Shown: piece after piece, positions 727 to 59,687 of the stretch | Numbering within the stretch: position 1 is the first letter of the stretch | Layout of the letters: each line of letters opens with the position of its first letter | Assembly (NCBI GenBank): GCA_026770705.1 | Contig: JANJGN010000121.1 | Coordinates: 496,001 to 560,000, forward strand | Source: Isurus oxyrinchus | Lineage: Eukaryota | Length of the DNA stretch: 64,000 nucleotides | Direction: 5' to 3' | Made by a program: the position numbers and the translations under genes | Notes under the pieces: generated by a model | Database searches by the model: none | Seen by the model: the letters and a program-made list of their open reading frames with translations, nothing else | Told to the model about the DNA's origin: nothing

Positions 727-1095
727 CAGAAACGTGAAGCTGGGTTACAGGGTAATAGTTATGGCTCGGACCATTGTCAAATTCTATTCTGAAAAAATAA
801 GGTCCTGCATCTTCCCGTCTGATGTTGTTTATAATCAGGGAACAGTCGCCATCTTTCAGGTCTCCAGACAGCCGGGTCCGATGGTGGAACCGTGGTAACT
901 CGTGACTGTGATCCTTGGAGTGAAAGACAATGGGAGCCCAGGGAATATGTTTCTCATTATGAAACCAGACTCCACCTCGCGGTTGGTTTTCCAGACACGA
1001 TGGATAACTGTAATGACATGGAATCTGTACACAGGAACCTTCCTGCGCTGTCACCTCTCGTGGAGTGTCACCTTTCCACTCTTGTGAGGGTTCAG
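727..1095 (-). CDS. G1 second V-set Ig exon, Siglec-like (369 nt, phase 1-1)
   Basis: ccccag acceptor, gtaagt donor. EGSCVQIPCHY...GDCSLII...DAGPYFFRIE shows the Siglec Cys pattern (no F-strand Cys) and the essential Arg. Positions 1-60 match the V-C2 intron of the paralogs, so the C2 exon should lie just outside the window. Confidence 0.92.
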
Positions 1096-1154
1096 CTGGG
1101 GAGAGAAATATCAATATTTAACTCTGAATGGTTTGTGGATCCAATAGACTTAAA

Positions 1155-1990
1155 ATTTACAGATGAGGCTGAATTGGGGGGATGGTCAATACTGAGGAGA
1201 ATGGCAACAAATTATTTTGGCAAGATGAATAGAAAAACAGGATATTATTTAAATGGAGACAGGCTGCAGAATGCAGTACAGAGGGATCTGGGTGTCCTTG
1301 TACATGAATCACAGAAAGTCAGCATTCAGGAACACCACGGAATGAGGAAGGCACGTGGAATGTTGGCCTTTATTGCAAAGGGATGGAGTATAAAAGGAGG
1401 GAAGTCTTGCAACAGCTGCACAGGGTGAGATTGTATCAGGAGCAGTGTGTACAGTTCTGGTCTCCTTACTTAGGGAGGGATAGACTTGCATTGAAGGCAG
1501 TTCAGAGGAGGTTCACTGGGCTGATTCCCGGGATTAAAGGGTTTGTCCTGTGAGGAAATGTTGAGCAGGTTGGGCCTGTATCCATTGGAGTTTAGAAGAA
1601 TGAGGGGTGACCTTATTGAAACATATCCGATTCCGAGGGGGCTTGACAGGGTGAATGCTGGGAGGATGTTTCCCCCTCGTGGGGGAATCTAGAACCAGGG
1701 AGCACAGTTTCGGAATGAGTGCTCTCCCATTTAAGACTGAGATGAGGAGGAATTTCCTCTCTCAGAGTGGCGCTAGCCTGTGGAATTCTCTTCCCCAGAG
1801 AGCAGTGGAGGCTGGGCCATTGAATAGACTCAAGGCTGAGTGAGGCAGGTTTTTGATCGACAAGGGAGTCAAGGATTTGGGGGACAGGCAGGAAAATGGA
1901 GTTAAGGCCACAACCAGATCAGTGAGAGCAGGCTCGAGGGGCCGAATGGCCTGATCCTGTTCCTATTTCTTATGTTCCTACATTCTTACC
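1155..1990 (+). mobile_element. CR1-like LINE 3' fragment
   Basis: Decayed RT C-terminus (QRDLGVLVHESQK...GMLAFIAKG) and typical aggctcgaggggccgaatggcct...cctatttcttatgtt tail. Confidence 0.8.
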
Positions 1991-2054
1991 TTCTTAAAAT
2001 ATTAAAGCTGCAGAATAAACATGCAAGTGACTGACCCGCTCGACCCACCTTCCA

Positions 2055-3050
2055 TCAGGGGCTGGAGGAGGTTACACAGATAAGGAGGTTTGTGGGTGCT
2101 GGAGGAGGTAACAGAGATAGGGAGGGCTGTAGATACTGGAGGACATTACGCAGATAGGGAGGGTGGTAGGACCTGGAGGAGGTTGCAGAGATAGGGAGGG
2201 CTGTAGGGATTTGAGGAGTTTATGGCGATGGGGAGCGTGTAGGGACTGGAGGAGGCTGCAAGGGCAGAGAGGGTTTTAGGGGCAGGAGGAGTTTACAGGA
2301 ATAGGAAAAGTTGTAGGGGCTGGACGGATTGCAGAGGTAGGGAGGGTTGGAAAGGCTGGTGGAGGTTTCAGAGGTAGGGAAGGTTGCAGGGACTGGATGA
2401 GTTTACAGAGATGGGGGAGTTTTTGGGGCAGGATGGGGTTACAGAGATAGGGAGGGTTGTAAGGGCAGGACGAGGTTACATAGATATGGAGTGTGGCTGG
2501 GGCTGAGGGAGGATACAGAGATAGGGAGGGTTATAATGGCTGGAGGAGGTTACAGAGATAAAGGAAACTCTTAGGGACTGGAGGAGGTTACAGAGATAGG
2601 GAGGGTTGTAGTGGGCTGGAGGAGGTTACAGAAATATGAAGGGTTGTAAGAGATGGACCAGCTTACAGAGATAGGGAGAGGTATTCGGTCTGGAGGAGGT
2701 TGCAGAGATAGGGGAGGTTGTTAGGACTGGAGGAGGCTACAAATATCGCGAGGGTTATCGGGGCTTGAGGAGGTTAAAGAGATAGGGAGGGGTGTTGGGT
2801 CCGGAGGAGTTTGCAGTGATAGGAATGGTTTTCGGGATTGGAAGAGAGTACTGAGATAGGAGGGTTGTAGGGACTGGAGGAGTCTCCTGAGAAAGGGAGG
2901 GTTGTAGGGACTGGAGGAGGCTCCTGAGATAGGGAGGGTTGTAGGGACTGGAGGAGGCTCCTGAGATAGAGAGGGTTGTAGGGACTGGAGGAGGCTCCTG
3001 CGATAGGGAATGTTGCCGTGGATGAAGATAAAGGAGGAGATTACTGTAAT
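2055..3050. repeat. Degenerate ~37-bp tandem array (ggactggaggaggttacagagatagggagggttgtag)
   Basis: Directly visible repeat units abutting the 3' end of an L2-like LINE. Confidence 0.85.
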
Positions 3051-4035
3051 AGGGAGGAAAAATATTCAATAATTTGGACATTGAGACTTTGCTTGACCAG
3101 GAGCTAGTCTCGGTCATCGAGCAGAGCGGGTGATAAGGGAACGGGACTTGGTGTGAGTAAGGACGTGGTCAGCAGTTTTGGATGGCCTCAAGTTTATGGA
3201 GTGTAGAGCATGTGTTGGAACAGTCGAGTCTGGAGGTAATGAAGGCGTGGATGAGGGTTTCAGCAGCAGATGAGCTGAGACAGGGTGAAGTCGTACGACG
3301 TTATGGAGGTGGAAATAGACGGTGTTAGTGAGGGCGCAGATAGGAGGCCGGAAGCTCATCTCAGGATCAAATGGGACAACAAAGCTGTGAACAGATTGGC
3401 TTCAATCTCAGAGAGCTGCCAGGGAGAGGAATGGAGTTGGTAGCGAGGGAACAGAGTTTGGAGCGGGGAATGAAGACAATGGCTTCAGTCTTTCCAATAT
3501 TTAATTGGAGGGAATTTCTGCCCATCCAGTACTGGATGTCGGATAAGCAGCCTGATAATTTAGCAGCAGTGGAGGAGTCGAGAGAGGTGGTGGTGAGGTA
3601 GAGCTGGGGATCCTCAGTGGACAGGTGAAAACTAATACTGTTCAGATGATGCTGCAAAGCCATTGCAAGTGATTCTCTGGCTACGATGAGATGGATAAGA
3701 ATGGAGCCAGGGGAGAGCAGTTCCACCCAGCTGGACGACAGTGGAGAGGGGTTGGAGGAGGATGGTGTGGTCGAGCGTGTCAAAGGCTGCAGACAGATCG
3801 AGAAGGACGAGGAGGGAAAGTTGACCTTTGTCACAGTCACACAGGATGCCATTTGTGACCTTGATAAGAGCTGTTTCAGCACAGTGGCTGGGGTGGGAAC
3901 CTGATTGGAGGGATTCAAACATGGAGTTCCGGGAAAGATGGAACCGGATTCGGGAGATGGAAACACTTTCAAGGACTTTGGAGGGGAAAGAGAGGCTGGA
4001 GATGGGATGGGGGTTTACACGGACAGTGTGAGGGG
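3050..4035 (-). mobile_element. L2-like LINE reverse transcriptase fragment, decayed
   Basis: LQSGSHPSHCAETALIKVTN...LLVLLDLSAAFDTLDHTILL and LQLNIGKTEAIVF RT motifs across frameshifts. Confidence 0.85.
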
Positions 4036-4286
4036 TGGAAGGTGTAGTGGGGAGGAGACACTTCACTCAGGGGGGAGGTGTCATCACCCCTCAGCTCGGT
4101 TTACGTTACAGCTATGATGTGGATTCAATCACACACAATAAGCTCATGGATCTGGGAGCAGAAATAGACAAATCATTAAAAATAGTGACGCTGGTTAACA
4201 CAGCCAAAAAACAAGCAAATCAAACACTATTATTTCCCATTGAGTGTTGGATGTGAATTGGTGAGTAATTATAACACAGCACTTAC

Positions 4287-4664
4287 CAGAAACCTGAAGC
4301 TGGGTTACAGGGTAATAGTTATGGCTCGGACCATTGCCAAATTTTATCGTGAAAAAATAAGGTCCTGCATCTTCCCGTCTGATGTTGTTTATAATCAGGG
4401 AACAGTCGCCATCTTTCAGGTCTCCAGACAGCCGGGTCCGATGGTGGAACTGTGATAACTCGCGACTGTGATCCTTGGAGTGAAAGGCTATAGACCATTT
4501 AGACCATTTGTTCTGTATGTATCTTCTCATTTTCCAGATTCCGACCTGTGGTTTCTTTACCAAATCTGATGGATAACTGTAATGACATGGAATCTGTACA
4601 CACGAACCTTCCTGCGCTGTCACCTCTCGTGGAGTGTCACCTTTCCACTCTTGTGACAATCCAA
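4287..4664 (-). CDS. G1 first V-set Ig exon (378 nt, phase 1-1), essential Arg replaced by Thr
   Basis: ccccag/gtaagt boundaries, open frame, YFFTIKF instead of YFFRIEF. Confidence 0.9.
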
Positions 4665-5019
4665 CTGGGGAGAGAAATATCAATATTTAACTCTGGATGT
4701 TTTGTTGATCCACTAGACTCGATATCCACCCCCTCCATCACTCGGGCACAGTGGCTGCAGTGTGGACCATCTACAGGACACACAATGAACTCCACAAGGT
4801 ATCACACCAGATGGAAGAGAATCCTGGACACAAAAGCGGAAAAGTTCATTCTACATTGGTTCATGGTCCTCAGGACCCTGTTTGTGCAGAAGTCTGCTCT
4901 CCAACAGAACTGAAGTTGGGGACAATGCATTTGGAATTCCACTGTCCGGGGCATTGGGTTAACTTGCTGATTTTGTTTTAAAGCTAACATCTATTTTTGG
5001 TCTGTTGCCTTAAAGGGAC

Positions 5020-6578
5020 TGTAACTGGGAGTCAGGTTAATTAGGAATTTTAGGAGTTATGATAGCAGTCTTGTAGTTACGTATGTGCTTGAAATCTTTT
5101 ATTTTGATGACAAATATGTTAATTTATTGTTTTAAATCTCTGAAGGTATTGGTGGAGTTAGTGCTTCTGAATTAAGTGCACACATCTCATAATAAATACA
5201 AATTGCAAAATCATTATGATAGTGTGACCAGGTTTCTCTCAGGGACTTGGTCTGCCTGGCACACATCACCTGCCAAGTGATAACACTTTTGTAATATGCC
5301 TTTCAGGGACAGCAGCATGACATCACTCGAGGGGAAGTTTGTCATGTGATTTTTAGGAACTGGTGTTCGCTTAAGTAATTCTATGTTTATTTGTGTGTGT
5401 TAGGCATAAGGTCTATCTTTAAGTTCAAGTTTAGTTTGTATTTCTGTATTTGGGTGTTGAGAAAAGGGGGAACTTGAGTTAAAAAGAAGCCAGCATTCCA
5501 TTGAGGTTTAATGACTGTTGAAGGGAAGTCAAAACAAATACAAGGCGTAAGAAACTGTGCTGTTGCCTAGCAACAGTGATCCAGAGGGAAGGACCCACAG
5601 AGACCGAGAAAAACAGAAAAGTACTTTCAGTTCTGTTGAAAGGAGTTGCCAGGAGAAGCAGCAAAGGAGCGGGACAGATAGTCAGTCCCAAAGTAAAGAA
5701 GAAGCCAAATCTATCGAGTTTGACAGGAGAAAGGGCCCAAGAAAACCTTCTAGTCAAATCTGGAAAAGGCCCTGTTAAGTGAAGTTAAGAGTGAGGAGCA
5801 GAAGAAGGCTTCAAGCATAAAGGGAGAAGCAGCAGGACACAGGCCTAAAGCAAAATAGGCTTGTGAGAAGCCAGAAGATCCTAGGAGACACCACAGGTTG
5901 GTGACTCATTACTACGGCCATGTGAAGCCATGGTGTTCCATTGACACGGCTGAGCATTGGAGAGACAGGGCGTGGAAGGAAGGCTGAATGCACGTGGCGA
6001 TCCAGGGGGCAGGAACATGGGAAGGAGAGTTTGAAATAGTGAAAGTGGACCCGTGTGGAAGGTGTCTGAGTGAAAGTGTCATGTTGGAGAAGATTCCAAA
6101 GTCAGTTATGGAGAGTGGAGATTGGAAACTCTCATATGAAAGAAGCTTTTCAGTGAGACTGGTTGGCTCACAGTGTAACAAGCGTCTGGGGACAGATGAG
6201 ACATAGAATTTGTTTCAAGTGGGCTCTGCCACTTGCTTTCAGAATGTTGTGTCCCTGACCACAGGTCGTCTATTGGTTTACACGGACTGTGTACTTAGTG
6301 TGAACATGAGAATATAAGATAGTTATCGTAATTTGTGTTCTACTTATGTATCTGTAAAGGTATAGGTCTGGGTGAAGGAGTAATGTCATATAGTTTGTCT
6401 TTCCTAGTTTAATAAATATTTTATTCTTTTGTTAGACGTTCATCAGATGACTCCTGTGACACTGTTCAGTAGCCGCACTCCACATTCCTAAATAAAAAAT
6501 AAAAGTTAGGACCTATCAAGCTGAGTTCCACCCTGGGATCTGACTTGCCCAGTAGTAACATCAGCTGGGATGGTAACA
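5020..6578 (+). mobile_element. LTR-like element(s), probably two adjacent solo LTRs
   Basis: TGT...ACA termini, AATAAA near the 3' ends, and a 3' motif shared with the solo LTRs at 43.3 and 46.4 kb. An inverted copy lies at ~51830-53425. No clear TSD. Confidence 0.45.
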
Positions 6579-6768
6579 CCATCCAGTCCAAGTTTCACTT
6601 TGACCTGTGAGCAGAACACAGCTCACACAGTTTGGCTGCAGGTGTCTCCCAGCTTTCTATCCTTGTATATCTGTTCTCATGTCCCTGTTCTAAATATCTG
6701 AACCCACAATGTATTTACCCAATGCCGTATCAGTGGCTGGTGCCTTTATATCATTATAAAAACATAAC

Positions 6769-9945: not shown

Positions 9946-9985
9946 CTTCGAGAAGTGACAGGAGGAAGTAGGATTTCCCGATCAT
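9946..9985 (-). CDS. G1 leader (signal peptide) exon CDS, MIGKSYFLLSLLE
   Basis: ATG plus 40 nt to G|gtaat donor (phase 1), acceptor ttcacag at 10026. Four paralogous copies in the window. Confidence 0.85.
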
Positions 9986-13140: not shown

Positions 13141-13253
13141 CTCTGATACGAAGGTGATTCTAACCAGGACACTGACCAGTTTGATTACAACTTAACACAA
13201 CATCACACGTTATTTGTCCGCACTGACTGACCAGATTGTTGCTTTACAAAGCT

Positions 13254-13393
13254 TCAAACAGTCTGTCGACTTCCTTTCACTGTTTGTCTCTCCCAGACAC
13301 AGACTCCAGTGATAGTGATAACCACAGCCACAAGGAATATCACAGCTCGTATTCCCAGGATCAGGATCACATGCAGAATCTCTCCTCCACTGT
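13254..13393 (-). CDS. G2 terminal TM exon with intramembrane Arg and short tail (activating type)
   Basis: ttctctag acceptor; phase-1 translation (D)SGGEILHVILILGIRAVIFLVAVVITITGVCVWERQTVKGSRQTV*. Near-identical copy at 59548. Confidence 0.88.
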
Positions 13394-15061: not shown

Positions 15062-15214
15062 GTTCCACAGTGACGGTTATGAACCCCTCCACTGCTCCAT
15101 GTTCATTCTCTGCCACACACTGATAGTCTCCAGTGTCCCGATATGTAATGGGAGGAATCACCAACCACAGCTCATTGTTGGAACTTGTTCTGTTCATTTG
15201 GACATTAAGATGTC
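15062..15214 (-). pseudogene. G2 truncated second C2 exon (3' half only)
   Basis: HLNVQMNRTSSNNELWLV...DTGDYQCVAENEHG is retained. The acceptor and 5' half are replaced by unrelated ~180 bp, with an in-frame TGA just upstream. Confidence 0.8.
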
Positions 15215-15537: not shown

Positions 15538-15834
15538 CTTGCACAGTTAGTACGAGGGTCCGCTCCGATGAAACAGATGGATATCTCACTCTGCAGCTGA
15601 GAGTGTGTCCGTGGTGTTTGAGTGATGGGATCAGGGTCAGAACAGAAGTATAGGTCAGAGTGACACCATGCTGAGTTACAGTGTTTGAGACTGATCCAGG
15701 TACGTCAGTGGGAGTGTCCCAGGTTAAGACAGGTGCTGCTGTTCCATTGCACGTTGTGTTGAAGGTGCAGCTTACATCCACACACTTTCCTGCAATAATT
15801 TCAGCAGGGAATATCATGGGTTTATCTGTGAAAT
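15538..15834 (-). CDS. G2 first C2-set Ig exon (297 nt, phase 1-1)
   Basis: gttag/gtaagt; DFTDKPMIFP...VSCTFNTTCNG...LTW...LSCRVRY...LTVQ, Siglec domain-2 pattern. Confidence 0.92.
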
Positions 15835-16693: not shown

Positions 16694-17068
16694 CAGAAAC
16701 ATGAAGCTGGGTTACAGGGTAATAGTTATGGCTCGGACCATTGTCAAATTCTATTCTGAAAAAATAAGGTCCTGCATCTTCCCGTCTGATGTTGTTTATA
16801 ATCAGGGAACAGTCGCCATCTTTCAGGTCTCCACACAGCCGGGTCCGATGGCGGAATCTTTGATCCCTGTGACTGTGACCCTCAGAGTGAAAGGCTATAG
16901 ACCGTTTCGGCTGTGGGTTCCCATCTATTCCTTTCAACCAGATTCCGACACGTGATCTCCCTACGAAATTTGATAAGTAACTGTAATGACATGGAATCTG
17001 TACACAGGAACCTTCCTGCGCTGTCACCTCTCGTGGAGTGTCACCTTTCCACTCTTGTGACAGTCCAA
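16694..17068 (-). CDS. G2 single V-set exon (375 nt)
   Basis: Canonical splice sites, open frame, YFFRIE. Confidence 0.92.
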
Positions 17069-17766: not shown

Positions 17767-17806
17767 CTTGGAGAAGTGACAGGAGGAAGTAAGATTTCCC
17801 GATCAT
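17767..17806 (-). CDS. G2 leader exon CDS, MIGKSYFLLSLLQ
   Basis: ATG, phase-1 donor gtaat. Confidence 0.87.
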
Positions 17807-22399: not shown

Positions 22400-22516
22400 T
22401 TATAAATTCCCATAAACAGAATCCTTGGCAAAATCACAGTTTGCGTAAAGATCATCATCTGTATCAGGATTGACTCCGCGGTTAGGTTTCATTTCCAGAA
22501 CCTTTTCATCTTTCTT
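22400..22516 (-). CDS. G3 terminal cytoplasmic exon KKDEKVLEMKPNRGVNPDTDDDLYANCDFAKDSVYGNL*
   Basis: tttctattacag acceptor, phase 0, two Tyr motifs, TAA stop; AATAAA candidate at 21623-21628. Not in the ORF track. Confidence 0.82.
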   Translation of the reverse strand, partial: KKDEKVLEMKPNRGVNPDTDDDLYANCDFAKDSVYGNL

Positions 22517-24709: not shown

Positions 24710-24814
24710 CTGATTCCTCAAAGCCCAACCACGCTCACAGTTTTCATAAACAGGACCTCGATGTTCATCAGCACGATGGTTCGATTTGATTCCTGCTTTC
24801 ACCTCGCCTCTCTT
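24710..24814 (-). CDS. G3 cytoplasmic exon KRGEVKAGIKSNHRADEHRGPVYENCERGWALRNQ (105 nt, phase 0-0)
   Basis: ctctattacag acceptor, CAG|gtgagt donor, YEN motif, paralogous to the terminal exon. Confidence 0.78.
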
Positions 24815-25325: not shown

Positions 25326-25410
25326 CCAGGACCTGTCCGACTGCTCGCCTGAGGAGGAACTGCCCACACGCTCTGCTTGGGCTGAATGACCTCTTCCTGT
25401 GCTGCTCCCT
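25326..25410 (-). CDS. G3 juxtamembrane exon (85 nt, phase 2-0), (K)GSSTGRGHSAQAERVGSSSGEQSDRSW
   Basis: ctaat..acacag acceptor, gtaagt donor. Bridges the phase-2 end of the TM exon to the phase-0 cytoplasmic exon with no stop. Confidence 0.68.
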
Positions 25411-26218: not shown

Positions 26219-26315
26219 TTTCTCACACACTTGAAAATGAAGAATCCACTCAGTCCAACATTCAAACAGATTCCAGCTCCAAGCAATCCTGCTTTCCATT
26301 CATTGGAATCTCGCC
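26219..26315 (-). CDS. G3 transmembrane exon (97 nt, phase 1-2), (R)RDSNEWKAGLLGAGICLNVGLSGFFIFKCVR
   Basis: ttttacag/gtaagt; 20-aa uncharged Gly-rich segment followed by basic residues, similar in style to CD33-type TM exons. Confidence 0.82.
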
Positions 26316-27580: not shown

Positions 27581-27862
27581 GTTCCACAGTGATGGTTATG
27601 AACCCCTCCACTGCTCCATGTTCATTCTCTGCCACACACTGATAGTCTCCAGTGTCCCTGGATGTAACGTGAGGAATCACCAACCACAGCTCATTGTTGG
27701 AACTTGTTCTGTTCATTGGGACATTAAGATGTCGCCACGTCAGGTTAGAAGCTGGGAAGCTCTCGACAGAGCAGATTATCACTGCAGAATTCCCCTCAAT
27801 TATATTGATCGATGAAGCGTTAATCATATCAAGAGAAGTAATTGATAGGTTCCGTGGTGCAT
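27581..27862 (-). CDS. G3 third C2 exon (282 nt, phase 1-1)
   Basis: (Y)APRNLSI...IICSVESFPASNLTW...DTGDYQCVAENEHG...TVE; tttag/gtgagt. Confidence 0.9.
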
Positions 27863-28745: not shown

Positions 28746-28927
28746 NNNNNNNNNNNNNNNNNNNNNNNNNNNNNNNNNNNNNNNNNNNNNNNNNNNNNNN
28801 NNNNNNNNNNNNNNNNNNNNNNNNNNNNNNNNNNNNNNNNNNNNNNNNNNNNNNNNNNNNNNNNNNNNNNNNNNNNNNNNNNNNNNNNNNNNNNNNNNNN
28901 NNNNNNNNNNNNNNNNNNNNNNNNNNN
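28746..28927. other. Assembly gap (N run)
   Basis: Ns; begins directly after the GT donor of the 28930-29211 exon. Confidence 1.
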
Positions 28928-28929
28928 AC

Positions 28930-29211
28930 ATTCCACAGTGTTGGTTCTGAATCCCTCCACTGCTCCATGTTCATTCTCTGCCACACACTGATAGTCTCCA
29001 GTGTCCCTGGATGTAACGTGAGGAATCACCAACCACAGCTCATTGTTGGAACTTGTTCTGTTCATTGGGACATTAAGATGTCGCCACGTCAGGTTAGAAG
29101 CTGGGAAGCTCTTGACAGAGCAGATTATCACTGCAGAATTCCCCTCAATTATATTGATCGATGAAGCATTAATCACATCAAGAGAAGTAATTGAGAGATT
29201 CTGTGGTGCAT
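28930..29211 (-). CDS. G3 second C2 exon (282 nt, phase 1-1)
   Basis: (D)APQNLSI...YQCVAENEHG...TVE; ttttag acceptor, GT donor at the gap edge. Confidence 0.85.
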
Positions 29212-30154: not shown

Positions 30155-30451
30155 CTTGCACAGTTAGTATGAGGGTCTGCTCCGATGAAACAGATGGATA
30201 TCTCACTCTGCAGCTGAGAGTGTGTCCGTGGTGTTTGAGTGATGGGATCAGGGTCAGAACAGAAGTATAGGTCAGAGTGACACCATGCTGAGTTACAGTG
30301 TTTGAGACTGATCCAGGTACGTCAGTGGGAGTGTCCCAGGTTAAGACAGGTGCTGCTGTTCCATTGCACGTTGTGTTGAAGGTGCAGCTTACATCCACAC
30401 GCTTTCCTGCAATAATTTCAGCAGGGAATATCGTGGGTTTATCTGTGAAAT
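30155..30451 (-). CDS. G3 first C2 exon (297 nt)
   Basis: Paralog of 15538-15834, intact splice sites. Confidence 0.92.
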
Positions 30452-30822: not shown

Positions 30823-31191
30823 CAGAAACATGAAGCTGGGTTACAGGGTAATAGTTATGGCTCGGACCATTGTCAAATTCTATTCTGAAAAAATAAGGTC
30901 CTGCATCTTCCCGTCTGATGTTGTTTATAATCAGGGAACAGTCGCCATCTTTCAGGTCTCCAGACAGCCGGGTCCGATGGTGGAACCGTGGTAACTCGTG
31001 ACTGTGATCCTTGGAGTGAAAGGCAATGGGAGCCCAGGGAATCTGTTTCTCATTATTAAACCAGACTCCACCTCGCGGTTGGTTTTCCAGACACGATGGA
31101 TAACTGTAATGACATGGAATCTGTACACACGAACCTTCCTGAGCTGTCACCTCTCGTGGAGTGTCACCTTTCCACTCTTGTGAGGGTTCAG
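30823..31191 (-). CDS. G3 second V-set exon (369 nt)
   Basis: Intact, YFFRIE, extra BC-loop Cys. Confidence 0.92.
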
Positions 31192-32848: not shown

Positions 32849-33217
32849 CAGAAACGTGAAGCTGGGTTACAGGGTAATAGTTATGTCTCGGACCATTGTC
32901 AAATTCTATTCTGAAAAAATAAGGTCCTGCATCTTCCCGTCTGATGTTGTTTATAATCAGGGAACAGTCGCCATCTTTCAGGTCTCCAGACAGCCGGGTC
33001 CGATGGTGGAACCGTGGTAACTCGTGACTGTGATCCTTGGAGTGAAAGGCAATGGGAGCCCAGGGAATCTGTTTCTCATTATTAAACCAGACTCCACCTC
33101 GTGGTTGGCTTTCCAAATGTGCTGGATAACTGTAATGACATGGAATCTGTACACACGAACCTTCCTGCGCTGTCACCTCTCGTGGAGTGTCACCTTTCCA
33201 CTCTTGTGACAGTCCAA
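32849..33217 (-). CDS. G3 first V-set exon (369 nt)
   Basis: Intact, YFFRIE. Confidence 0.92.
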
Positions 33218-36674: not shown

Positions 36675-36714
36675 CTTGGAGAAGTGACAGGAGGAAGTAA
36701 GATTTCCCGATCAT
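36675..36714 (-). CDS. G3 leader exon CDS, MIGKSYFLLSLLQ
   Basis: ATG, phase-1 gtaat donor. Confidence 0.87.
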
Positions 36715-42631: not shown

Positions 42632-42874
42632 TCACTTGAATCTGATCTGTGCGTATTCCGTCTCCTCTTCCCTGTGGACAGACCCATCACCACTGGGCAC
42701 CCTGAAGACTTGGGGATTGGCGTAGAGAAGGTCGGCGGGATTGTCAGGGTTCCCATGTCCAGCATCGCCTCCCACTGCACCTTCAGAGAGACCCCGGGGA
42801 GCTGGGGTCTCCCCCTCACTAGTTGTGTCTCTGGTTGCGTTCCGGGGCTCAGTAATCAGCACGTTCTGTTTACC
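42632..42874 (-). CDS. Terminal cytoplasmic exon T1 (phase 0), GKQNVLITEPR...DLLYANP...EETEYAQIRFK*
   Basis: tttctctgtag acceptor; distal ITSM TEYAQI as in CD33-type Siglec tails; AATAAA at ~42061-42066. No parent ectodomain found in the window. Confidence 0.75.
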   Translation of the reverse strand, partial: GKQNVLITEPRNATRDTTSEGETPAPRGLSEGAVGGDAGHGNPDNPADLLYANPQVFRVPSGDGSVHREEETEYAQIRFK

Positions 42875-44224: not shown

Positions 44225-44306
44225 CTGGTGCTTCACAGAGAGTGGACTGGGGGTCAATGCAATGTCTCTGGTCCCTGAAACTCTCTCCTCCATCGCTGTC
44301 TTTCTC
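44225..44306 (-). CDS. Juxtamembrane exon J1 (82 nt, phase 2-0), RKTAMEERVSGTRDIALTPSPLSVKHQ
   Basis: ttgcag/gtacag; phases fit TM (phase 2) to terminal exon (phase 0). Confidence 0.65.
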
Positions 44307-45234: not shown

Positions 45235-45386
45235 NNNNNNNNNNNNNNNNNNNNNNNNNNNNNNNNNNNNNNNNNNNNNNNNNNNNNNNNNNNNNNNNNN
45301 NNNNNNNNNNNNNNNNNNNNNNNNNNNNNNNNNNNNNNNNNNNNNNNNNNNNNNNNNNNNNNNNNNNNNNNNNNNNNNNNNNNNNN
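45235..45386. other. Assembly gap, probably a GA microsatellite
   Basis: Ns; the paralogous site at 42310-42440 is a (GA/CA)n tract. Confidence 0.95.
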
Positions 45387-45612: not shown

Positions 45613-45861
45613 TCAGTTTCGCTTGAATCTGATCTGTGCGTATTCCGTCTGCTCTTCCCTGTGGACAGACCCATCACCACTGGTCACCCTGAAGACTTGG
45701 GGATTGGTGTAGAGAAGCTCGTTGGGATTGTCAGGGTTCCCATGTCCAGCATCGCCTCCCACTGCACATTCAGAGAGACCCCGGGGAGCTGGGGTCTCCC
45801 CCTCACTAGTTGTGTCTCTGGTTGTGTTCCGGGGCTCAGTAATCAGCACGTTCTGTTTACC
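45613..45861 (-). CDS. Terminal cytoplasmic exon T2, ...ELLYTNP...EQTEYAQIRFKRN*
   Basis: Intact paralog of T1. Confidence 0.72.
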   Translation of the reverse strand, partial: GKQNVLITEPRNTTRDTTSEGETPAPRGLSECAVGGDAGHGNPDNPNELLYTNPQVFRVTSGDGSVHREEQTEYAQIRFKRN

Positions 45862-47309: not shown

Positions 47310-47391
47310 CTGGTGCTTCACAGAGAGTGGACTGGGAGTCAAGGCAATGTCACTGGTCCCTGAAACTCTCTCCTCCATCGCTGTCTTTCTC
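47310..47391 (-). CDS. Juxtamembrane exon J2 (82 nt)
   Basis: Intact paralog of J1. Confidence 0.62.
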
Positions 47392-48564: not shown

Positions 48565-48813
48565 TCAGTTATGCTCGAACCTGATCTGTGCGTATTCCGT
48601 CTCCTCTTCCCTGTGGACAGACCCATCATCACTGGACATCCTCAATACTTGGGGATTGGCGTAGAGAAGGCCGTCGGGATTGTCGATGTGCCAATGTCCA
48701 GCATCGCCTCCCAATGCACCTTCAGAGAGACCCCGGGGAGCTGGGGTCTCCCCCTCGCTAGTTGTGTCTCTGGTTGTGTTCCGGGGCTCAGAAATCAGCA
48801 CGTTCTGTTTACC
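48565..48813 (-). CDS. Terminal cytoplasmic exon T3, ...GLLYANP...EETEYAQIRFEHN*
   Basis: Intact paralog of T1; no J exon upstream. Confidence 0.7.
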   Translation of the reverse strand, partial: GKQNVLISEPRNTTRDTTSEGETPAPRGLSEGALGGDAGHWHIDNPDGLLYANPQVLRMSSDDGSVHREEETEYAQIRFEHN

Positions 48814-49950: not shown

Positions 49951-49964
49951 CACTTCCTCATTTT
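49951..49964 (-). promoter_or_regulatory. PU.1/Ets motif, putative G4 promoter
   Basis: cacttcctcatttt, same offset as in G1-G3. Confidence 0.55.
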
Positions 49965-50006
49965 GTCTCACAGTGACACATCCACCCTTTCTAATTAAAC
50001 ACACAG

Positions 50007-50091
50007 AGGGAGCAGCACAGGAAGAGGTCATTCAGCCCAAGCAGAGCGTGTGGGCAGTTCCTCCCCAGGCGAGCAGTCGGACAGGTCCTGG
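50007..50091 (+). other. G4 85-nt upstream exon
   Basis: GG|gtaagt donor at 50092. Confidence 0.7.
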
Positions 50092-50541: not shown

Positions 50542-50581
50542 ATGATCGGGAAATCTTACTTCCTCCTGTCACTTCTCCAAG
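50542..50581 (+). CDS. G4 leader exon CDS, MIGKSYFLLSLLQ
   Basis: Acceptor at 50501, ATG, G|gtaat. Confidence 0.87.
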
Positions 50582-54471: not shown

Positions 54472-54837
54472 TTGGACTACCACAAGTGTGGAAAGGTGAC
54501 ACTCCACGAGAGGTGACAGCGCAGGAAGGTTCGTGTGTACAGATTCCGTGTCATTACAGCTACCCATCATATTTAGTACCGAGATCACCTGTTGGAATCT
54601 GGTATATGAGACGGAATTGGGAAACATGGTCTATAGCCTTTCACTCCAAGGATCACAGTCGCGAGTTACCACGGTTCCACCATCGGACCCGGCTTTCTGG
54701 AGACCTGAAAGATGGTGACTGTTCCCTGATTATAAACAACATCAGACGGGAAGATGCAGGATATTATTTATTCAGAACAGATTTTGACAGCAGGAATAGA
54801 TACAACGACCGTCCTGAAACCCAGCTTCATGTTTCTG
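54472..54837 (+). CDS. G4 first V-set exon (366 nt)
   Basis: cctag/gtaagt; open; YYLFRTDF keeps the Arg. Confidence 0.9.
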
Positions 54838-55261
54838 GTAAGTGCTGTGTTATAATTACTCAACAATTCACATCCAACACTCAATGGGAAATAATAGTGT
54901 TTGATTTGCTTGTTTTTTGGCCATGTTAACCAGCGTCACTATTTTTAATGATTTGTCTATTTCTGCTCCCAGATCCATGAGCTTATTGTGTGTGATTGAA
55001 TCCACATCATAGCTGTAACGTAAACCGAGTTGAGGGGTGATGACACCTCCCCCCTGAGTGAAGTGTCTCCTCCCCACTACACCTTCCACCCCTCACACTG
55101 TCTGTGTAATCTCCTGTCCCATCCCCAGCCTCTCTTTCCCCTCCAAAGTCCTGCAACGTGTTTCCATCTCCCGAATCCGTTCCCATCTTTCCCGGAACTC
55201 CATGTTTGAATCCCTCCAATCAGGTTCCCACCCCAGCCACTGTGCTGAAACAGCTCTTATT

Positions 55262-55645
55262 TTTATTGAGCCAATGCCAAGCCCCGATACCGAGCGAGAG
55301 CCTCCTCATTTGCTGAGTTTAAGGTGATGAGTCAGCCCCTTAGTCCGTAGAGGGGATTCTCCTCGGTAATGTGCAGCCTTGTTTGTGTCTCTCCACAAGC
55401 GCATGAGGGGTTTGTACAGAGGCTGCAGCGCTGGAGGGGGTCTGCACAGGGGTCCTGGCCTGTCCTGAGCTGGTTTTAGCAAGGACAACTCTGGCCTTGG
55501 CAGCTGAAAGCCAGCCATTGGACAGACGGGGCCTGTCACAAGGAGCCTGTTAGTCACTCCCCCCCGTGTCTCCTGTGCTCAGATCCAGACCATGTTGGCT
55601 GGTGGATCTGGCTCAGGAAGGGTCCTCCCCATGGGACCCCCAGAG
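55262..55645 (-). mobile_element. 3' end of a non-LTR retrotransposon of a different clade
   Basis: GFQLPRPELSLL.. followed by a frameshifted Cys/His-rich knuckle-like segment and an AATAAA/A-rich end. Confidence 0.4.
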
Positions 55646-55709
55646 GGAAGGTGGGTCGAGCGGGTCAGTCACTTGCATGTTTATTCTGCTGCTTTAATAT
55701 TTTAAGAAG

Positions 55710-56505
55710 GTAAGAATGTAGGAACATAAGAAATAGGGACAGGAGCAGGCCATTCGGTCCCTCCAGCCTGCTCTCACTGATCTGGTTGCGGCCTTAACTC
55801 CATTTTCCTGCTTGTCCCCCAAACCGTTGACTCCCTTGTCGATCAAAAACCTGCCTCACTCAGCCTTGAGTCTATTCAATGGCCCAGCCTCCACTGCTCT
55901 CTGGGGAAGAGAATTCCACAGGCTAGCGCCCCTCTGAGAGAGGAAATTCCTCCTCATCTCAGTCTTAAATGGGGGAGCCCTCATTCCGAAACTGTGCTCC
56001 CTGGTTCTAGATTCCCCCACGAGGGGGAAACATCCTCCCAGCATCCACCCTGTCAAGCCCCCTCGGAATCGGATATGTTTCAATAAGGTCACCCCTCATT
56101 CTTCTAAACTCCAATGGATACAGGCCCAACCTGCTCAACATTTCCTCACAGGACAAACCCTTTAATCCCAGGAATCAGCCCAGTGAAGCTTCTCTGAACT
56201 GCCTGTACACAATGATCCTGTTACAATCTCACTAACACCCTGTGCAGCTGTTGCAAGACTTCCCTCCTTTTATACTCCATCCCTTTGCAATAAAGGCCAA
56301 CATTCCACTTGCCTTCCTCATTCCGTGGTGTTCCTGAATGCTGACTTTCTGTGATTCATGTACCAGGACACCCAGATCCCTCTGTACTGCATTCTGCAGC
56401 CTGTCTCCATTTAAATTATATCCTGTTTTTCTATTCTTCCTGACAATATAATTTGTTGCCATTCTCCTCAGTATTGACCATCCCCCCAATTCAGCCTCAT
56501 CTGTA
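55710..56505 (-). mobile_element. CR1-like LINE fragment, duplicate of 1155-1990
   Basis: Near-identical reverse complement with an internal deletion. Confidence 0.82.
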
Positions 56506-56567
56506 AATATCGGGTTCAGTGGATCCACAAACCATTCAGAGTTAAATATTGAGATTTCTCTCCCCAG

Positions 56568-56933
56568 CTGAACCCTCGCAAGAGTGGAAAGGTGACACTC
56601 CACGAGAGGTGACAGTGCAGGAAGGTTCCTGTGTACAGATTCCATGTCATTACAGTTATCCATCGTGTCTGGAAAACCAACCGTGAGGTGGAGTCTGGTT
56701 TAATAATGAGGAATGGAGAACATCGTCTATAGCCTTTCACTCCAAGGATCACAGTCACGAGTTACCACGGTTCCACCATCGGACCCGGCTGTCTGGAGAC
56801 CTGAAAGATGGCGACTGTTCCCTGATTATAAACAACATCAGACGGGAAGATGCGGGTCCTTATTTTTTCAGAATAGAATTTGACAATGGTCCGAGCCATA
56901 ACTATTACCCTGTAACCCAGCTTCACGTTTCTG
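56568..56933 (+). pseudogene. G4 second V exon, inactivated
   Basis: CGA>TGA at 56684-56686 and donor GT>AT at 56934. Confidence 0.9.
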
Positions 56934-57661
56934 ATAAGTGCTGTGTTATAATTACTCAACAATTCACATTCAACACTCAATGGGAAATAACACAAACTGT
57001 GACGTTTACGTATTAACACAAAACACAGCTTATTATAATACACTGTCTGATTCTCAATAACCTGGTGATCGCTTCCAATTCACTCCTAAAGCAACCTCTA
57101 ATACTCACTTTAATATCAATGATTAAATGTATTGACTGTGTCCATCAATGTTATCAGGTTATCCACTCCTATCGATCTCTCTAATCCTGTCTCGAAGTCT
57201 GACTTAGCGACAGAAGAAAGATTCACATTTCTGTAGCACCTTTCACCACCTCAGCATGGACCAAATCACTTCACAGCCAATGAGCTGATTCCTGAATTGT
57301 AGTTACTATTGTAATGTGGGAAACACAGCAACCAATTTGCACACAGCAAGCTCCCACAAATTGCAAAGTAAAAAATGGCCCAGATCGCTGAGGGACTGAT
57401 GGGTTAGTGCACCCCAAACTCTGGTCTGCTCCACCACCCTCACCCACTATTATCAGTTCAAGTGTCTCGGAGTGAACGTGTATTAAGCTGAGAGACAGAA
57501 ACACCAAAGTCTCAAAGCAGGAAATTCTCTCCTAATCATTGTAACCTCTCAGATCTGATATCATCCTTGTAAAAGTGCTTTTTCTTGTGGGACTGTGATT
57601 TCTATTTGAACTGATGCTTCACGTTATATTTGTCTAAAAGGATCCATTCTCTGTCTGTTAG

Positions 57662-57958
57662 ATTTCACAGATAAACCCACGATATTCCCTGCTGAAATTA
57701 TTGCAGGAAAGCGTGTGGATGTAAGCTGCACCTTCAACACAACGTGGAATGGAACAGCAGCACCTGTCTTAACCTGGGACACTCCCACTGACGTACCTGG
57801 ATCACTCTCAAACACTGTAACTCAGCATGGTGTCACTCTGACCTATACTTCTGTTCTGACCCTGATCCCATCACTCAAACACCACGGACACACTCTCAGC
57901 TGCAGAGTGAGATATCCATCTGTTTCATCGGAGCGGACCCTCGTACTAACTGTGCAAG
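57662..57958 (+). CDS. G4 first C2 exon (297 nt), interdomain Cys>Trp
   Basis: gttag/gtaagt; CTFNTTWNG. Confidence 0.9.
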
Positions 57959-58281
57959 GTAAGTACAGACACCCTTCATTCTACATCAGCACTCCCTCAG
58001 CGCTGACCCTCTGACAGTGCAGCCCGTTCTCAGTGTCCACATTCTCAGACCTCTCAAAGTGCTTCACAGTCGATAGAAGTTAACTGATCTTTATTTGATT
58101 GTTGCTGAATGAAGAGACAAGCTGTCTAAACTTTACATCTCACACACATTATTTTCCATGGCAACACCTCCTCCAATCAGAGACCACTTGCTGATTAACC
58201 AGCACTCTCTTCCCTTTAAATATAAATTGTTGTTCACTTTCTGTTGGTAAACCTGCAATCTGTCTTGTTGAGTCCGGTCCT

Positions 58282-58433
58282 GACATCTGAATATCACAAT
58301 GAACAGAACAAGTTCCAACAATGAGCTGTGGTTGGTGATTCCTCACGTTACATCCAGGGACACTGGAGACTATCAGTGTGCTCAGAGAATGAACATGGAG
58401 CAGTGGAGGGGTTCATAACCATCACTGTGGAAC
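58282..58433 (+). pseudogene. G4 truncated second C2 exon
   Basis: Same 5' replacement as in G2, plus a 1-nt deletion near 58380. Confidence 0.82.
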
Positions 58434-59547
58434 GTTAGTTAAGACAAACTTCAACATCTCTCTCAGATTGAAACACTACAGAAACTCACATAAATATCCA
58501 GCCTTAAATAGACACCTGCAGACACACAATCCCACATCTATGAGCACACACAAAGACACACTCACAAACAAACACACTAGCACATACTCCCCTGTGGATT
58601 ACCTGACCTCCCTCAGTGCTGCACCGGAGAGTTGACCTGGATTCTGGGATTTGTGTTCCCTTTCATATTTATGGAAGAATATGGAAATTGCAAAGTCTAT
58701 TACAGACACTCAGATGCACAGAGTTACTCACAGATACTCTCTGCCTCTCCAACTCTCTATCCTCCTTTAAGAACCTTCCTGAAATCTAACTCTTTGACCA
58801 GTCACCTGTCCCAATTCCTCCTTACGTGATTTTGTGTGAAATTTTGTTTGAGTATCTGAGAGTAAGAGGGAAGTGGAGAGGTTTAGGAAGGGAATTCCTG
58901 TTGCTGAAAAGCTTACATCAAGTTCTCAGCTTTCCAGTGCCCATTTTTCACATGATGTCCATGTTCATAATGGGGATTGCCTATGTAAACATCACGCTGT
59001 AGTTACACTCTCCCACCAGTGGTAGCACGGTAACACTTAACCCTTGCATCTCCAAGCTTTTCAAGCAATTTCACTTCCTAATTTGCTACTATTCACCTCA
59101 ACCATTCCCTGTGGGAGCGAGTTCCACATTCTCCCCTCTCTCTGGGTAAAGATTGGAACTGTTTATTAAGCGGGGTGTGTAAGTCCGTGGGGGAGTCCAT
59201 CTCGATCCTGCCCGATTCGCACACGCGTCCGAGATGGATTTCCACCCTGCACTAAACGTTTCCAGAATTTTCTACAGCACAATCCTGTACACAGCGATGG
59301 AGAGAAACATTGGACAGAGAGTCCAACAGCACAATGATCCATTCTCACCAATGTTCCACGCTAAGGGGAAAGTTCCGATTGTCCACTCTTAGAGTGTTTA
59401 CAGTGAAAACATTCATTCCACATTGAATCCCAGTGGATGGGTCAATATTACAGCAAATGTTGCAGTGATATGAAGCTTGATTGTTCAGCCAGAGTGAGAG
59501 ATTGAAAGCGGAGAGTCAGTGATGATTTCTTTCTGTGTGTTCTCTAG

Positions 59548-59687
59548 ACAGTGGAGGAGAGATTCTGCACGTGATCCTGATCCTGGGAATACGAGCTGTG
59601 ATATTCCTTGTGGCTGTGGTTATCACTATCGCTGGAGTCTGTGTCTGGGAGAGACAAACAGTGAAAGGAAGTCGACAGACTGTTTGA
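59548..59687 (+). CDS. G4 terminal TM exon with Arg (CGA 59592-59594) and short tail
   Basis: (D)SGGEILHVILILGIRAVIFLVAVVITIAGVCVWERQTVKGSRQTV*; AATAAA at 60071-60076. Confidence 0.88.

What the first reader, a model, noticed from the sequence alone, without database searches (positions are those of the whole stretch)
727..59687. Siglec-like paired-receptor cluster with three distinct signalling ends
Seen: near-identical leader, V and C2 exons are joined to (i) an Arg-containing TM plus a 12-aa tail (G2, G4) or (ii) an uncharged TM plus a triple-YxN/ITIM tail (G3). (iii) A separate ITSM-type tail module is present three times. Established: mammalian CD33-related Siglecs form activating/inhibitory pairs (Siglec-5/14, -11/16) homogenised by gene conversion. 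Inference: this is an independently expanded paired-receptor family in a cartilaginous fish with modular tail swapping. I cannot confirm it is undescribed.
Basis: partly seen in the sequence, partly recalled or inferred. Interest (0 to 1): 0.9.

Follow-up and report, generated by a model that had tools for sequence, protein, structure and literature searches.

The report
Shark Siglec-like paired receptor gene cluster
This stretch of a shark genome (closest to great white) holds four Siglec-type immune receptor genes whose very similar sugar-binding heads are attached to either an 'activate' or an 'inhibit' signalling end, a design known from mammals but not described in print for sharks.

Summary
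The window carries 4 leader exons, 7 Siglec-type V exons, 3 C2a exons, 2 full and 2 relic C2b exons, and three kinds of 3' end.

- End 1 is an Arg-containing TM with a 12-aa tail (G2, G4).
- End 2 is an uncharged TM plus three cytoplasmic exons with VYEN, LYAN and SVYGNL (G3).
- End 3 is three copies of a tail exon with LLYANP and TEYAQI.

All intact exons have AG/GT sites and compatible phases. RNA contigs from four studies carry the joints leader-V, V-C2a and C2a-ArgTM exactly at the G2 boundaries. A diagnostic base shows they may come from a close paralogue, so the chain is proven for the family, not for G2.

- G1, G3 and G4 have two tandem V exons.
- G4's second V exon is dead (TGA, broken donor).
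- The third tail has no TM or ectodomain exon upstream in this window.
- Both gaps lie in non-coding DNA.

Closest proteins are NCBI-predicted shark and ray 'Siglec-8/10/12/13/14' and 'CD33-like' models, up to 99% identical in Carcharodon. So the family is auto-annotated, but I found no paper on it. The scan had already found the same family elsewhere in this genome.

Ligand and signalling are inferred, not shown.

The parts
9946..9985 (-). G1 leader exon, coding part (MIGKSYFLLSLLE)
   Evidence: GT donor present; copy of the G2 leader
4287..4664 (-). G1 V1 exon. Open, AG/GT sites. The essential Arg is replaced by Thr (YFFTIKF).
727..1095 (-). G1 V2 exon. Open, AG/GT sites, with the extra Cys in PSC. 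The rest of G1 lies beyond the window start.
17767..17806 (-). G2 leader exon, coding part. The exon itself starts at an acceptor near 17846.
   Evidence: Joint 17068/17767 seen in 4 runs.
16694..17068 (-). G2 V exon (375 nt, phase 1/1)
   Evidence: Joints 17068/17767 and 15834/16694.
15538..15834 (-). G2 C2a exon (297 nt; C2-set_2)
   Evidence: Joints 15834/16694 and 13393/15538.
15062..15212 (-). G2 relic of a C2b exon. Only the 3' half is present and there is no acceptor. It is skipped in three runs.
13253..13393 (-). G2 Arg-TM exon with the 12-aa tail and stop
   Evidence: Joint 13393/15538.
36675..36714 (-). G3 leader exon, coding part
32849..33217 (-). G3 V1 exon (open, AG/GT, no PSC Cys)
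30823..31191 (-). G3 V2 exon (open, AG/GT, PSC Cys). It is 99% identical to the V2 of Carcharodon P0167.
30155..30451 (-). G3 C2a exon
28930..29211 (-). G3 first C2b exon. It is complete; its GT donor at 28929-28928 abuts gap 1.
28746..28927 (.). Assembly gap 1, inside the intron between the two C2b exons
27581..27862 (-). G3 second C2b exon (Ig_3/I-set)
26219..26315 (-). G3 uncharged TM exon (..AGLLGAGICLNVGLSGFFIF..)
   Evidence: 94-97% identical to Carcharodon P0249 and P0255.
25326..25410 (-). G3 cytoplasmic exon cyt1
24710..24814 (-). G3 cytoplasmic exon cyt2 (PVYEN)
22400..22516 (-). G3 last exon cyt3 (DLYAN, SVYGNL, stop)
50542..50581 (+). G4 leader exon, coding part
54472..54837 (+). 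G4 V1 exon (open, AG/GT; the most divergent V)
56568..56933 (+). G4 V2 pseudo-exon, with an in-frame TGA (ENQP*GG) and donor GT>AT
57662..57958 (+). G4 C2a exon. The extra Cys is lost (TTC>TTW).
58284..58435 (+). G4 relic of a C2b exon (3' half, 1-nt frameshift)
59548..59687 (+). G4 Arg-TM exon with 12-aa tail and stop
48571..48813 (-). Tail cassette D, exon cytB (LLYANP, TEYAQI). It has an internal AG|GT donor just after the TEYAQI codons.
47310..47391 (-). Tail cassette C, exon cytA (RKTAMEERVSG...)
45619..45861 (-). Tail cassette C, exon cytB
45235..45386 (.). Assembly gap 2, in non-coding CT-rich DNA between cassettes C and B
44225..44306 (-). Tail cassette B, exon cytA
42632..42874 (-). 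Tail cassette B, exon cytB

Best explanation
The window is part of a large, recently duplicated and partly inverted cluster of Siglec-type receptor genes. The host is a lamniform shark, either great white or a close relative.

Each gene encodes a type I membrane protein built from a signal peptide, one or two stacked V-set lectin domains, and one C2a plus zero to two C2b domains. The V-set domains carry the Siglec arginine and the Siglec cysteine pattern.

The ectodomain exons are kept alike by gene conversion, except for the C-C' loop. They are combined with different membrane and cytoplasmic modules.

- G2, and the damaged G4, end in a TM helix with a buried Arg and a 12-aa tail. This is the mark of an activating receptor that signals through a separate ITAM adaptor of the DAP12 or FcR-gamma kind.
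- G3 ends in an uncharged TM and a tail with two pYxN (Grb2-type) sites and a terminal ITIM, SVYGNL. This is the mark of an inhibitory or modulating receptor that recruits SH2 phosphatases.
- A third, longer inhibitory tail (cytA plus cytB, with LLYANP and then TEYAQI) is present only as a triplicated 3' cassette. Its gene has lost, or is separated from, its 5' part here.

Shown: the exons, their splice sites and phases, family-level splicing of the activating chain, and homology.

Inferred: sialic acid binding, adaptor coupling, phosphatase recruitment, and the decoy/counter-trap logic of paired receptors.
For: Domains:
- Pfam gives V-set 1e-12 plus Ig_CD22, C2-set_2, and Ig_3/I-set.
- PDB sequence and profile matches are to sialoadhesin, Siglec-5, MAG, Siglec-7 and CD33 at 1e-16 to 1e-13. 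FRIE aligns with the sialoadhesin FRFE Arg, and the A-strand Trp also aligns.
- The extra Cys of C2a aligns with the domain-2 Cys of MAG.

Exon map: AG/GT sites and phases are given.

RNA: canonical CT..AC joints 17068/17767 (4 runs), 15834/16694 (3 runs) and 13393/15538 (3 runs) come from 4 studies.

Homologues: shark proteins carry each end.
- The Arg-TM end is in P0006, P0167, P0170 and P0192.
- The TMU-cyt1-(cyt2)-cyt3 end is in P0013, P0156, P0007 and P0249.
- The TM-cytA-cytB end is in P0003, P0012, P0028 and P0164.

Homogenisation:
- G2 and G4 are 94-100% identical around C2a and 96-99% identical around the Arg-TM exon. That includes flanking intron. Elsewhere they are 79-87% identical.
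- Synonymous divergence is 0.11 in the V framework against 0.44 in the C-C' loop.
Against: - All RNA contigs read G at 15784 (Arg), where G2 has a Cys codon. The joints therefore prove the chain for the family, not for G2.
- The runs are only guessed to be RNA, and X1 also covers introns.
- No read evidence was obtained for G3 or for the cassettes.
- G4 has a dead V2 exon and a lost C2a Cys. G1 V1 lacks the Arg.
- The cassettes have no TM exon upstream on their strand.
- The junction between cassette D and the inverted G4 block lies in a 33-bp satellite that occurs at seven sites, so a misjoin there cannot be excluded.
- The AlphaFold model of the V domain is mediocre (pLDDT 67). Its fold matches do not separate Siglecs from PD-L1 or pIgR.
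- No binding or signalling data exist.
Confidence: 0.8

Rival explanations
1. The cluster in this window is mostly a graveyard of duplicated, decaying copies, possibly inflated by assembly errors around gaps and satellites. The transcripts seen come from intact paralogues elsewhere in the genome.
For: G4 V2 has a stop and a broken donor, and G4 C2a has lost a Cys. C2b is a half-relic in both G2 and G4. The tail cassettes are orphan. A 96% repeat abuts gap 1. All contigs differ from G2 at 15784. A 33-bp satellite sits at duplication borders.
Against: Six of seven V exons, all C2a, TM and tail exons, and all leaders are open with intact AG/GT sites and compatible phases. G2 and G3 have no disabling change. 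X1 covers a G2 intron with 1 mismatch in 310 nt, so the locus exists in an independent sample. Tandem C2b pairs occur in annotated homologues P0177, P0249 and P0006.
Confidence: 0.1
2. These are paired Ig-superfamily receptors that only resemble Siglecs. Their V domain would belong to another V-set group, such as pIgR, CD300 or PILR, or would no longer bind sialic acid, so the Siglec label from automatic annotation would be misleading.
For: Partial matches to pIgR domains reach about 1e-12 in the profile search. Foldseek ranks PD-L1 as high as the Siglecs on a mediocre model. G1 V1 has lost the Arg. No binding data exist.
Against: Full-length V alignments with the best E-values are to Siglecs only, and the essential Arg, the A-strand Trp and the three-Cys pattern are aligned. 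Pfam's CD22-type first Ig model is also hit. The extra Cys of C2a matches MAG domain 2. The pIgR matches cover only about 40 residues around the E-F strands.
Confidence: 0.05
3. The genes are shark orthologues of one conserved Siglec, such as Siglec-1 or MAG/SMP, that happens to be duplicated locally. They would then not be a lineage-specific CD33-like expansion.
For: Sialoadhesin is the best solved match for the V domain, and MAG is among the best for both V and C2a. NCBI names some homologues 'MAG-like'.
Against: E-values for Siglec-1, Siglec-5, MAG, Siglec-7 and CD33 are within about two orders of magnitude of each other. The architecture is short (1-2 V plus 1-3 C2), with ITIM/ITSM tails or a charged TM. 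A shark SMP-like protein falls outside the clade that holds all these V domains. There are dozens of copies per species, with species-level grouping.
Confidence: 0.05

Closest known systems
Human paired Siglecs: Siglec-5/Siglec-14 and Siglec-11/Siglec-16 (PMC6288428, PMC4042635)
   Same: - Highly similar V and C2 ectodomains are joined either to an ITIM-type tail or to a TM with a basic residue and a short tail.
- The ectodomains are homogenised by gene conversion.
- Null or damaged activating copies occur.
   Different: - One or two stacked V domains, instead of always one.
- Three kinds of 3' end instead of two.
- The G3 tail is YxN-rich with a C-terminal ITIM, rather than ITIM plus TEYSE(I/V).
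- The proximal motif of the long tail is LLYANP here, so the ITIM +3 position is lost.
- The adaptor is unknown.
- The host is a shark.
NCBI-predicted elasmobranch proteins. From Carcharodon: 'Siglec-12 isoform X2' (P0167), 'CD33-like' XP_041037180.1 (P0013), LOC121274079 (P0164) and 'MAG-like isoform X4' (P0249). From Cetorhinus: 'Siglec-12' (P0003, P0156).
   Same: The same exons are found at 60-99% identity. So are the same three ends, the same V1-V2 stacking with the PSC Cys, and the same doubled cytA-cytB tail.
   Different: These are automatic gene models named by best mammalian hit, with no study behind them. None is identical to a gene of this window. Some are clearly chimeric or frame-shifted models (P0165, P0028).
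Conserved fish Siglecs: Siglec-1, CD22, MAG and Siglec-15 (PMC7226832)
   Same: They share the Siglec V-set domain with the essential Arg, and some carry ITIM-bearing tails.
   Different: - PMC7226832 reports that fish genomes lack CD33-related Siglecs, but it treats teleosts only.
- The shark genes here are short (1-2 V plus 1-3 C2), multi-copy and paired.
- They group apart from a shark SMP/MAG-like protein.
Mouse sialoadhesin V domain (1QFO, 1URL)
   Same: It is the best solved match, at 1.4e-16 and about 31% identity. The Arg, the A-strand Trp and the B/E Cys pair are aligned.
   Different: Sialoadhesin has 17 Ig domains and no signalling tail, and is a single conserved gene.

Membership tests
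Siglec (I-type lectin) family | N-terminal V-set Ig domain followed by C2-set domains | tested here: met
   Pfam gives V-set 1e-12 plus Ig_CD22 first Ig. C2a is C2-set_2 at 1.5e-8, and C2b is Ig_3 at 8e-13.
Siglec (I-type lectin) family | Conserved F-strand arginine that pairs with the sialic acid carboxylate | tested here: met
   FR(I/T)(E/D) aligns with the sialoadhesin FRFE Arg. It is present in 6 of 7 V exons. G1 V1 has Thr instead.
Siglec (I-type lectin) family | Cys pattern: a B-E intrasheet pair plus a third V Cys matched by an extra Cys in domain 2 | tested here: met
   CVQIPC and DCSL are invariant. C2a has SC..TTC..LSC, and its TTC Cys aligns with the MAG domain-2 DNC Cys. It is lost in G4. 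The bonds themselves are not shown.
Siglec (I-type lectin) family | Binds sialylated glycans | not testable with these tools
   This needs glycan arrays with Fc fusions and an Arg mutant.
CD33-related Siglec subgroup | Groups with mammalian CD33-related Siglecs in phylogeny, or shares their locus | tested here: inconclusive
   Profile E-values are alike for Siglec-1, Siglec-5, MAG, Siglec-7 and CD33. No mammalian sequences were in the tree. Synteny is not testable here.
CD33-related Siglec subgroup | Membrane-proximal ITIM plus membrane-distal ITIM-like/ITSM motif in the tail | tested here: inconclusive
   The distal TEYAQI fits. The proximal LLYANP fails the +3 position in this window, although homologues have LLYASI. 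The G3 tail has a different layout. The motif pair is also common outside Siglecs.
Paired activating/inhibitory receptors | Near-identical ectodomains with opposite signalling modules in neighbouring genes | tested here: met
   C2a is about 96% identical and V 70-98%, with identical leaders. An Arg-TM with a 12-aa tail stands against an uncharged TM with an ITIM/YxN tail.
Paired activating/inhibitory receptors | Both forms are transcribed | tested here: inconclusive
   The activating chain is spliced in 4 studies, but it cannot be assigned to G2. The inhibitory chain is supported only by annotated homologues.
Paired activating/inhibitory receptors | The charged-TM form associates with an ITAM adaptor, and the ITIM form recruits SHP-1/2 | not testable with these tools
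   No adaptor gene lies in the window. This needs co-precipitation and phosphopeptide pull-downs.
Paired activating/inhibitory receptors | Concerted evolution of the ectodomain exons | tested here: met
   Identity blocks of 94-100% include intron flanks, against 79-87% elsewhere. pS is 0.11 in the framework against 0.44 in the C-C' loop.

The most novel reading that the evidence does not exclude
Sharks and rays possess their own very large family of CD33-like paired Siglecs, contrary to the printed view that fish lack such receptors. The family has three features unknown in mammalian Siglecs.

- Two or three lectin V domains are stacked head to tail and stapled by an extra cysteine.
- A hypervariable C-C' loop is kept diverse while gene conversion homogenises the rest of the domain.
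- Tail cassettes can be strung together by an internal donor, so that splicing sets the number of YxN/ITSM modules.

Either the paired-Siglec design dates back to the jawed-vertebrate ancestor, or it arose twice.
Probability: 0.4. Interest if true: 0.7.

Novelty: new variant of a known kind. Interest (0 to 1): 0.55.

Why it matters
Paired Siglecs are read in mammals as an arms race. Pathogens cloak themselves in sialic acid to engage inhibitory Siglecs, and hosts answer with activating look-alikes kept in step by gene conversion.

Finding the same logic, with extra twists, in sharks would do one of two things. It would push the design back more than 400 million years, or it would give a clean case of convergence. 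It would also correct the statement that fish lack CD33-type Siglecs.

The cluster also offers a natural experiment on which part of the lectin domain escapes homogenisation.

The family is already in databases under automatic names, and this scan has met it elsewhere in the same genome. This window therefore adds detail rather than a first discovery.

Tried and rejected
- **TM exon in the tail cassettes.** I looked with tblastn (word size 2, E 0.01) and by frame reading. None was found. The part hidden by gap 2 corresponds in the sister unit to a CT microsatellite.
- **cyt2 as a derivative of the leader exon.** There is no homology. Only a 308-bp patch around cyt1 is shared.
- **Gap 1 as a simple contig-overlap artefact.** This is rejected, because the sequence left of the gap does not continue the match. 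A haplotype duplication still cannot be fully excluded.
- **Word-based protein search with P0013.** It returned elasmobranchs only. This partly reflects the tool's sensitivity.
- **V-domain tree.** It has 122 columns and many unresolved forks. Only the elasmobranch clade and the lamniform grouping are usable.
- **AlphaFold model and Foldseek search.** The result is a generic V-set fold. MAG and sialoadhesin have the best TM-scores, but PD-L1 ranks as high, so it is not discriminating.
- **Literature.** Six searches and reads found no paper on shark Siglec clusters.
- **Joined protein models.** Each exon was searched by reference on its own.

Full report
**Layout.** The window is 64 kb, 45% G+C, with two gaps at 28746-28927 and 45235-45386. 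Six-frame ORFs, tblastn with the window's own exons and a self-comparison show a cluster of Ig exons inside a mosaic of segmental duplications. The left 16 kb (292-16085) is mirrored in inverted orientation at 49351-59954, at 88-96% identity. The exon census is:
- seven V-set exons
- three C2a exons
- two complete and two half C2b exons
- four leader exons
- two Arg-TM exons
- one uncharged TM exon
- six copies of a small cytoplasmic exon (cyt1)
- single cyt2 and cyt3 exons
- two cytA and three cytB tail exons.

**Gene models.** Exon borders were taken from the RNA joints on G2 and projected onto the other copies by alignment. Each intact exon has AG/GT sites and phases that fit.
- G2 (minus strand): leader 17806-17767, V 17068-16694, C2a 15834-15538, Arg-TM 13393-13253.
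- G3 (minus strand): leader 36714-36675, V1 33217-32849, V2 31191-30823, C2a 30451-30155, C2b 29211-28930, C2b 27862-27581, TM 26315-26219, cyt1 25410-25326, cyt2 24814-24710, cyt3 22516-22400.
- G1 (minus strand): leader 9985-9946, V1 4664-4287, V2 1095-727, then runs off the window.
- G4 (plus strand): leader 50542-50581, V1 54472-54837, V2 56568-56933, C2a 57662-57958, Arg-TM 59548-59687.

Every exon was searched by reference on its own.

- The G4 V2 exon has an in-frame TGA (ENQP*GG) and a GT>AT donor.
- The G4 C2a exon has lost the extra cysteine (TTC>TTW).
- G1 V1 has Thr in place of the essential Arg (YFFTIKF).
- G2 and G4 keep only the 3' half of a C2b exon, with no acceptor. G4's copy also has a frameshift.
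- G1, G3 and G4 have two V exons in tandem. The second always carries an extra Cys (PSC), and single or first V exons do not. Annotated shark proteins show the same pattern.

**Gaps.** Gap 1 begins two bases after the intact GT donor of the first C2b exon, so it lies in an intron. The exons on both sides are phase 1/1, so the frame does not depend on the gap. Continuity cannot be verified. A 299-bp repeat at 96% identity (27579-27877 against 28928-29226) abuts the gap. Tandem C2b pairs in homologues (P0006, P0177, P0249, P0255) make a true duplication likely. Gap 2 lies in CT-rich non-coding DNA between two tail cassettes. The matching part of the sister unit holds a microsatellite and no exon.

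**What the domains are.**
- The V exons match Pfam V-set (about 1e-12) and the CD22-type first Ig domain. C2a matches C2-set_2, and C2b matches Ig_3/I-set.
- Against solved structures the V exon hits sialoadhesin at 1e-13, then Siglec-5, -10, -8, -7, MAG and CD33.
- With a profile of the six intact V exons the order is sialoadhesin 1.4e-16, Siglec-5 1.3e-15, MAG 3e-15, Siglec-7 2e-14, CD33 3e-14, Siglec-15 5e-8 and CD22 2e-4.
- The Arg of FRIE aligns with the sialic-acid-binding Arg of sialoadhesin, and the A-strand Trp also aligns.
- The extra Cys of C2a aligns with the domain-2 Cys of MAG.
- An AlphaFold model is mediocre (pLDDT 67). It gives a generic V-set fold, with MAG and sialoadhesin at the best TM-scores but PD-L1 ranked as high, so it adds little.

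**The three ends.**
- (i) The Arg-TM exon has ..LILGIRAVIF.., with the Arg about one third into the helix, followed by ERQTVKGSRQTV and a stop. The two copies differ by one residue.
- (ii) The G3 tail reads TM ..AGLLGAGICLNVGLSGFFIF.., cyt1, cyt2 with PVYEN, and cyt3 with DLYAN and SVYGNL. That is two pYxN sites and a terminal ITIM that is also YxN.
- (iii) cytA (RKTAMEERVSG...KHQ) plus cytB carries LLYANP and, 23 residues on, TEYAQI, an ITSM. The proximal motif fits ITIM in homologues (LLYASI) but not here.

The cassettes form a roughly 3-kb tandem repeat on the minus strand. No TM or ectodomain exon lies upstream of them on that strand. What follows is a 33-bp satellite and the inverted G4 block. 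cytB_D keeps an internal AG|GT donor just after the TEYAQI codons. Carcharodon P0164 uses such a joint to give a doubled cytA-cytB-cytA-cytB tail, and cytB_C and cytB_B lack that donor. I read the cassettes as the 3' end of a gene cut off from its 5' part by the inverted duplication. A misjoin in the satellite is the alternative.

**Transcripts.** One look-up of public runs and one laying of contigs were allowed, and I used them on G2 (13000-17950). Four runs from four studies were laid at 92% likeness or better. They show these canonical joints, read as CT..AC on the plus strand:
- 17068/17767 (leader to V) in all four runs
- 15834/16694 (V to C2a) in three runs
- 13393/15538 (C2a to Arg-TM, skipping the C2b relic) in three runs.

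One contig joins the relic's donor (15062) to 13393, with 8% mismatches. These joints prove spliced RNA and fix the exon borders.

Caveats: the runs are only guessed to be RNA. X1 also covers introns, with 1 mismatch in 310 nt, so its organism is the window's species or nearly so. All four runs read G at 15784. That gives Arg, as in G3 and G4, where G2 has Cys. Many contigs also leave the stretch at the C-C' loop. The chain is therefore shown for the family, not for G2 itself. G3 and the cassettes were not tested with reads.

**Relatives.** A full HMMER scan with the V exon gives 1090 hits. The best are NCBI-predicted elasmobranch proteins named Siglec-8, -10, -11, -12, -13 or -14, CD33-like or MAG-like. 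They come from Scyliorhinus, Cetorhinus, Mustelus, Carcharodon, Chiloscyllium, Hemiscyllium, Stegostoma and Hypanus. A word search with P0013 gives 116 hits, all from sharks, rays and skates. The nearest hits outside are bowfin 'Siglec-14' and 'CD33-like', gar 'MAG-like' and kiwi 'Siglec-1' models, at about 40% identity.

All three ends recur in these proteins. Carcharodon P0167 is 99% identical to G3 V2. P0249 joins a V/C2 pair only about 30% identical to ours to C2b-C2b-TM-cyt1-cyt2-cyt3 at 84-96% identity. That is direct support for module re-use and for the G3 tail chain.

In a V-domain tree the elasmobranch sequences form one clade (SH-aLRT 95) apart from a shark SMP/MAG-like protein, bowfin, gar and kiwi. 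The window's exons sit among lamniform sequences, with V2-type and V1-type exons in separate groups. Resolution is otherwise poor.

**Homogenisation.** The six intact V exons are invariant over most of their length. They differ in a block of about 29 codons between HYSY and AFHS, the C-C' loop. Both synonymous and non-synonymous divergence are several times higher there (pS 0.44, pN 0.38) than in the rest (pS 0.11, pN 0.06). The framework is therefore young or converted, while the loop is old. Between G2 and G4, identity is 94-100% around C2a and 96-99% around the Arg-TM exon, including flanking intron, against 79-87% elsewhere. This is the pattern described for mammalian paired Siglecs (PMC6288428).

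**Known or new.** PMC7226832 states that only Siglec-1, CD22, MAG and Siglec-15 are regularly present in fish and that fish genomes lack CD33-related Siglecs. It deals with teleosts and does not mention sharks. The whale shark genome paper mentions Siglecs only in a list of gene families. I found no paper on this family. The genes are, however, in public databases under automatic names. This scan had already reported the same family on other DNA of this genome (s1-300785, s1-300793, s1-300797 and others).

**Verdict.** This is a real and partly intact Siglec-type paired-receptor cluster, a new variant of a known kind. This window adds:
- the exact exon chains
- the dead and relic exons
- the orphan, concatenable tail cassettes
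- the loop-versus-framework contrast.

Ligand and signalling remain inferences.

Noticed in passing
10520-10436(-), 18341-18257(-), 19033-18949(-), 37249-37165(-), 50007-50091(+); compare 25410-25326(-): An intact copy of G3's cytoplasmic exon cyt1 lies exactly 451 bp upstream of every leader ATG, and G2 has a second copy. Each copy has AG/GT sites and an open frame, and sits in a 308-bp patch 95% identical to G3's. The leader exon is itself an internal exon with an acceptor near 17846. One RNA contig carries 30 more letters upstream of it. Annotated shark proteins P0255 and P0165 join cyt1 directly to the leader exon. The copy could be a 5' non-coding exon, read-through between neighbouring genes, or a duplication scar. 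This is unexplained.
   Followed up: partly
17846-17767(-) and the other leader exons: The leader exon holds two upstream ATGs. One opens a 9-codon uORF that overlaps the main ATG. The other (MKYL...) reads through the exon in another frame. Several automatic shark gene models (P0028, P0198, P0165) start at that ATG and look mis-framed.
   Followed up: partly
10802-11168, 11389-11818, 18619-18875, 29344-30035, 46007-46291, 49071-49732, 60419-60770: A 33-bp satellite recurs at seven or more places, often at the edges of duplicated blocks. One of these places is the junction between tail cassette D and the inverted G4 block. It is a likely substrate for rearrangement and also for misassembly.
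   Followed up: partly
22615-24580: A 24-bp satellite of about 82 copies fills most of G3's last intron. It gives long spurious ORFs on both strands.
   Followed up: no
16694-17068(-) and 15784: G2 has two extra cysteines that its paralogues lack: RLCGD in V and GKCVD in C2a. All RNA contigs read Arg at the second site. This could be a private allele, a G2-specific pair of cysteines, or a sign that G2 itself is poorly expressed.
   Followed up: partly
292-16085 against 49351-59954: There is a large inverted duplication. G4 is a mosaic of G1-like 5' exons (leader, V1, V2) and G2-like 3' exons (C2a, relic, Arg-TM).
   Followed up: partly
32650-33265 against 30623-31239: G3 V1 is 95% identical in DNA to G3 V2. 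In the tree it groups with V2-type exons although it lacks the PSC cysteine and has the V1-type start (GLSQ). This looks like conversion of V1 by V2 within one gene.
   Followed up: partly
12487-12912(+), 24848-25195(-), 38706-38987(-), 62211-62678(-), 3367-4066(-): Fragments of LINE-type reverse-transcriptase ORFs and other repeats fill the introns and spacers.
   Followed up: no
37904-38635 against 43401-44086 and 46486-47171: A weak (66-68%) fourth copy of the intron part of the tail cassette lies upstream of the G3 leader. No exon is left in it.
   Followed up: no
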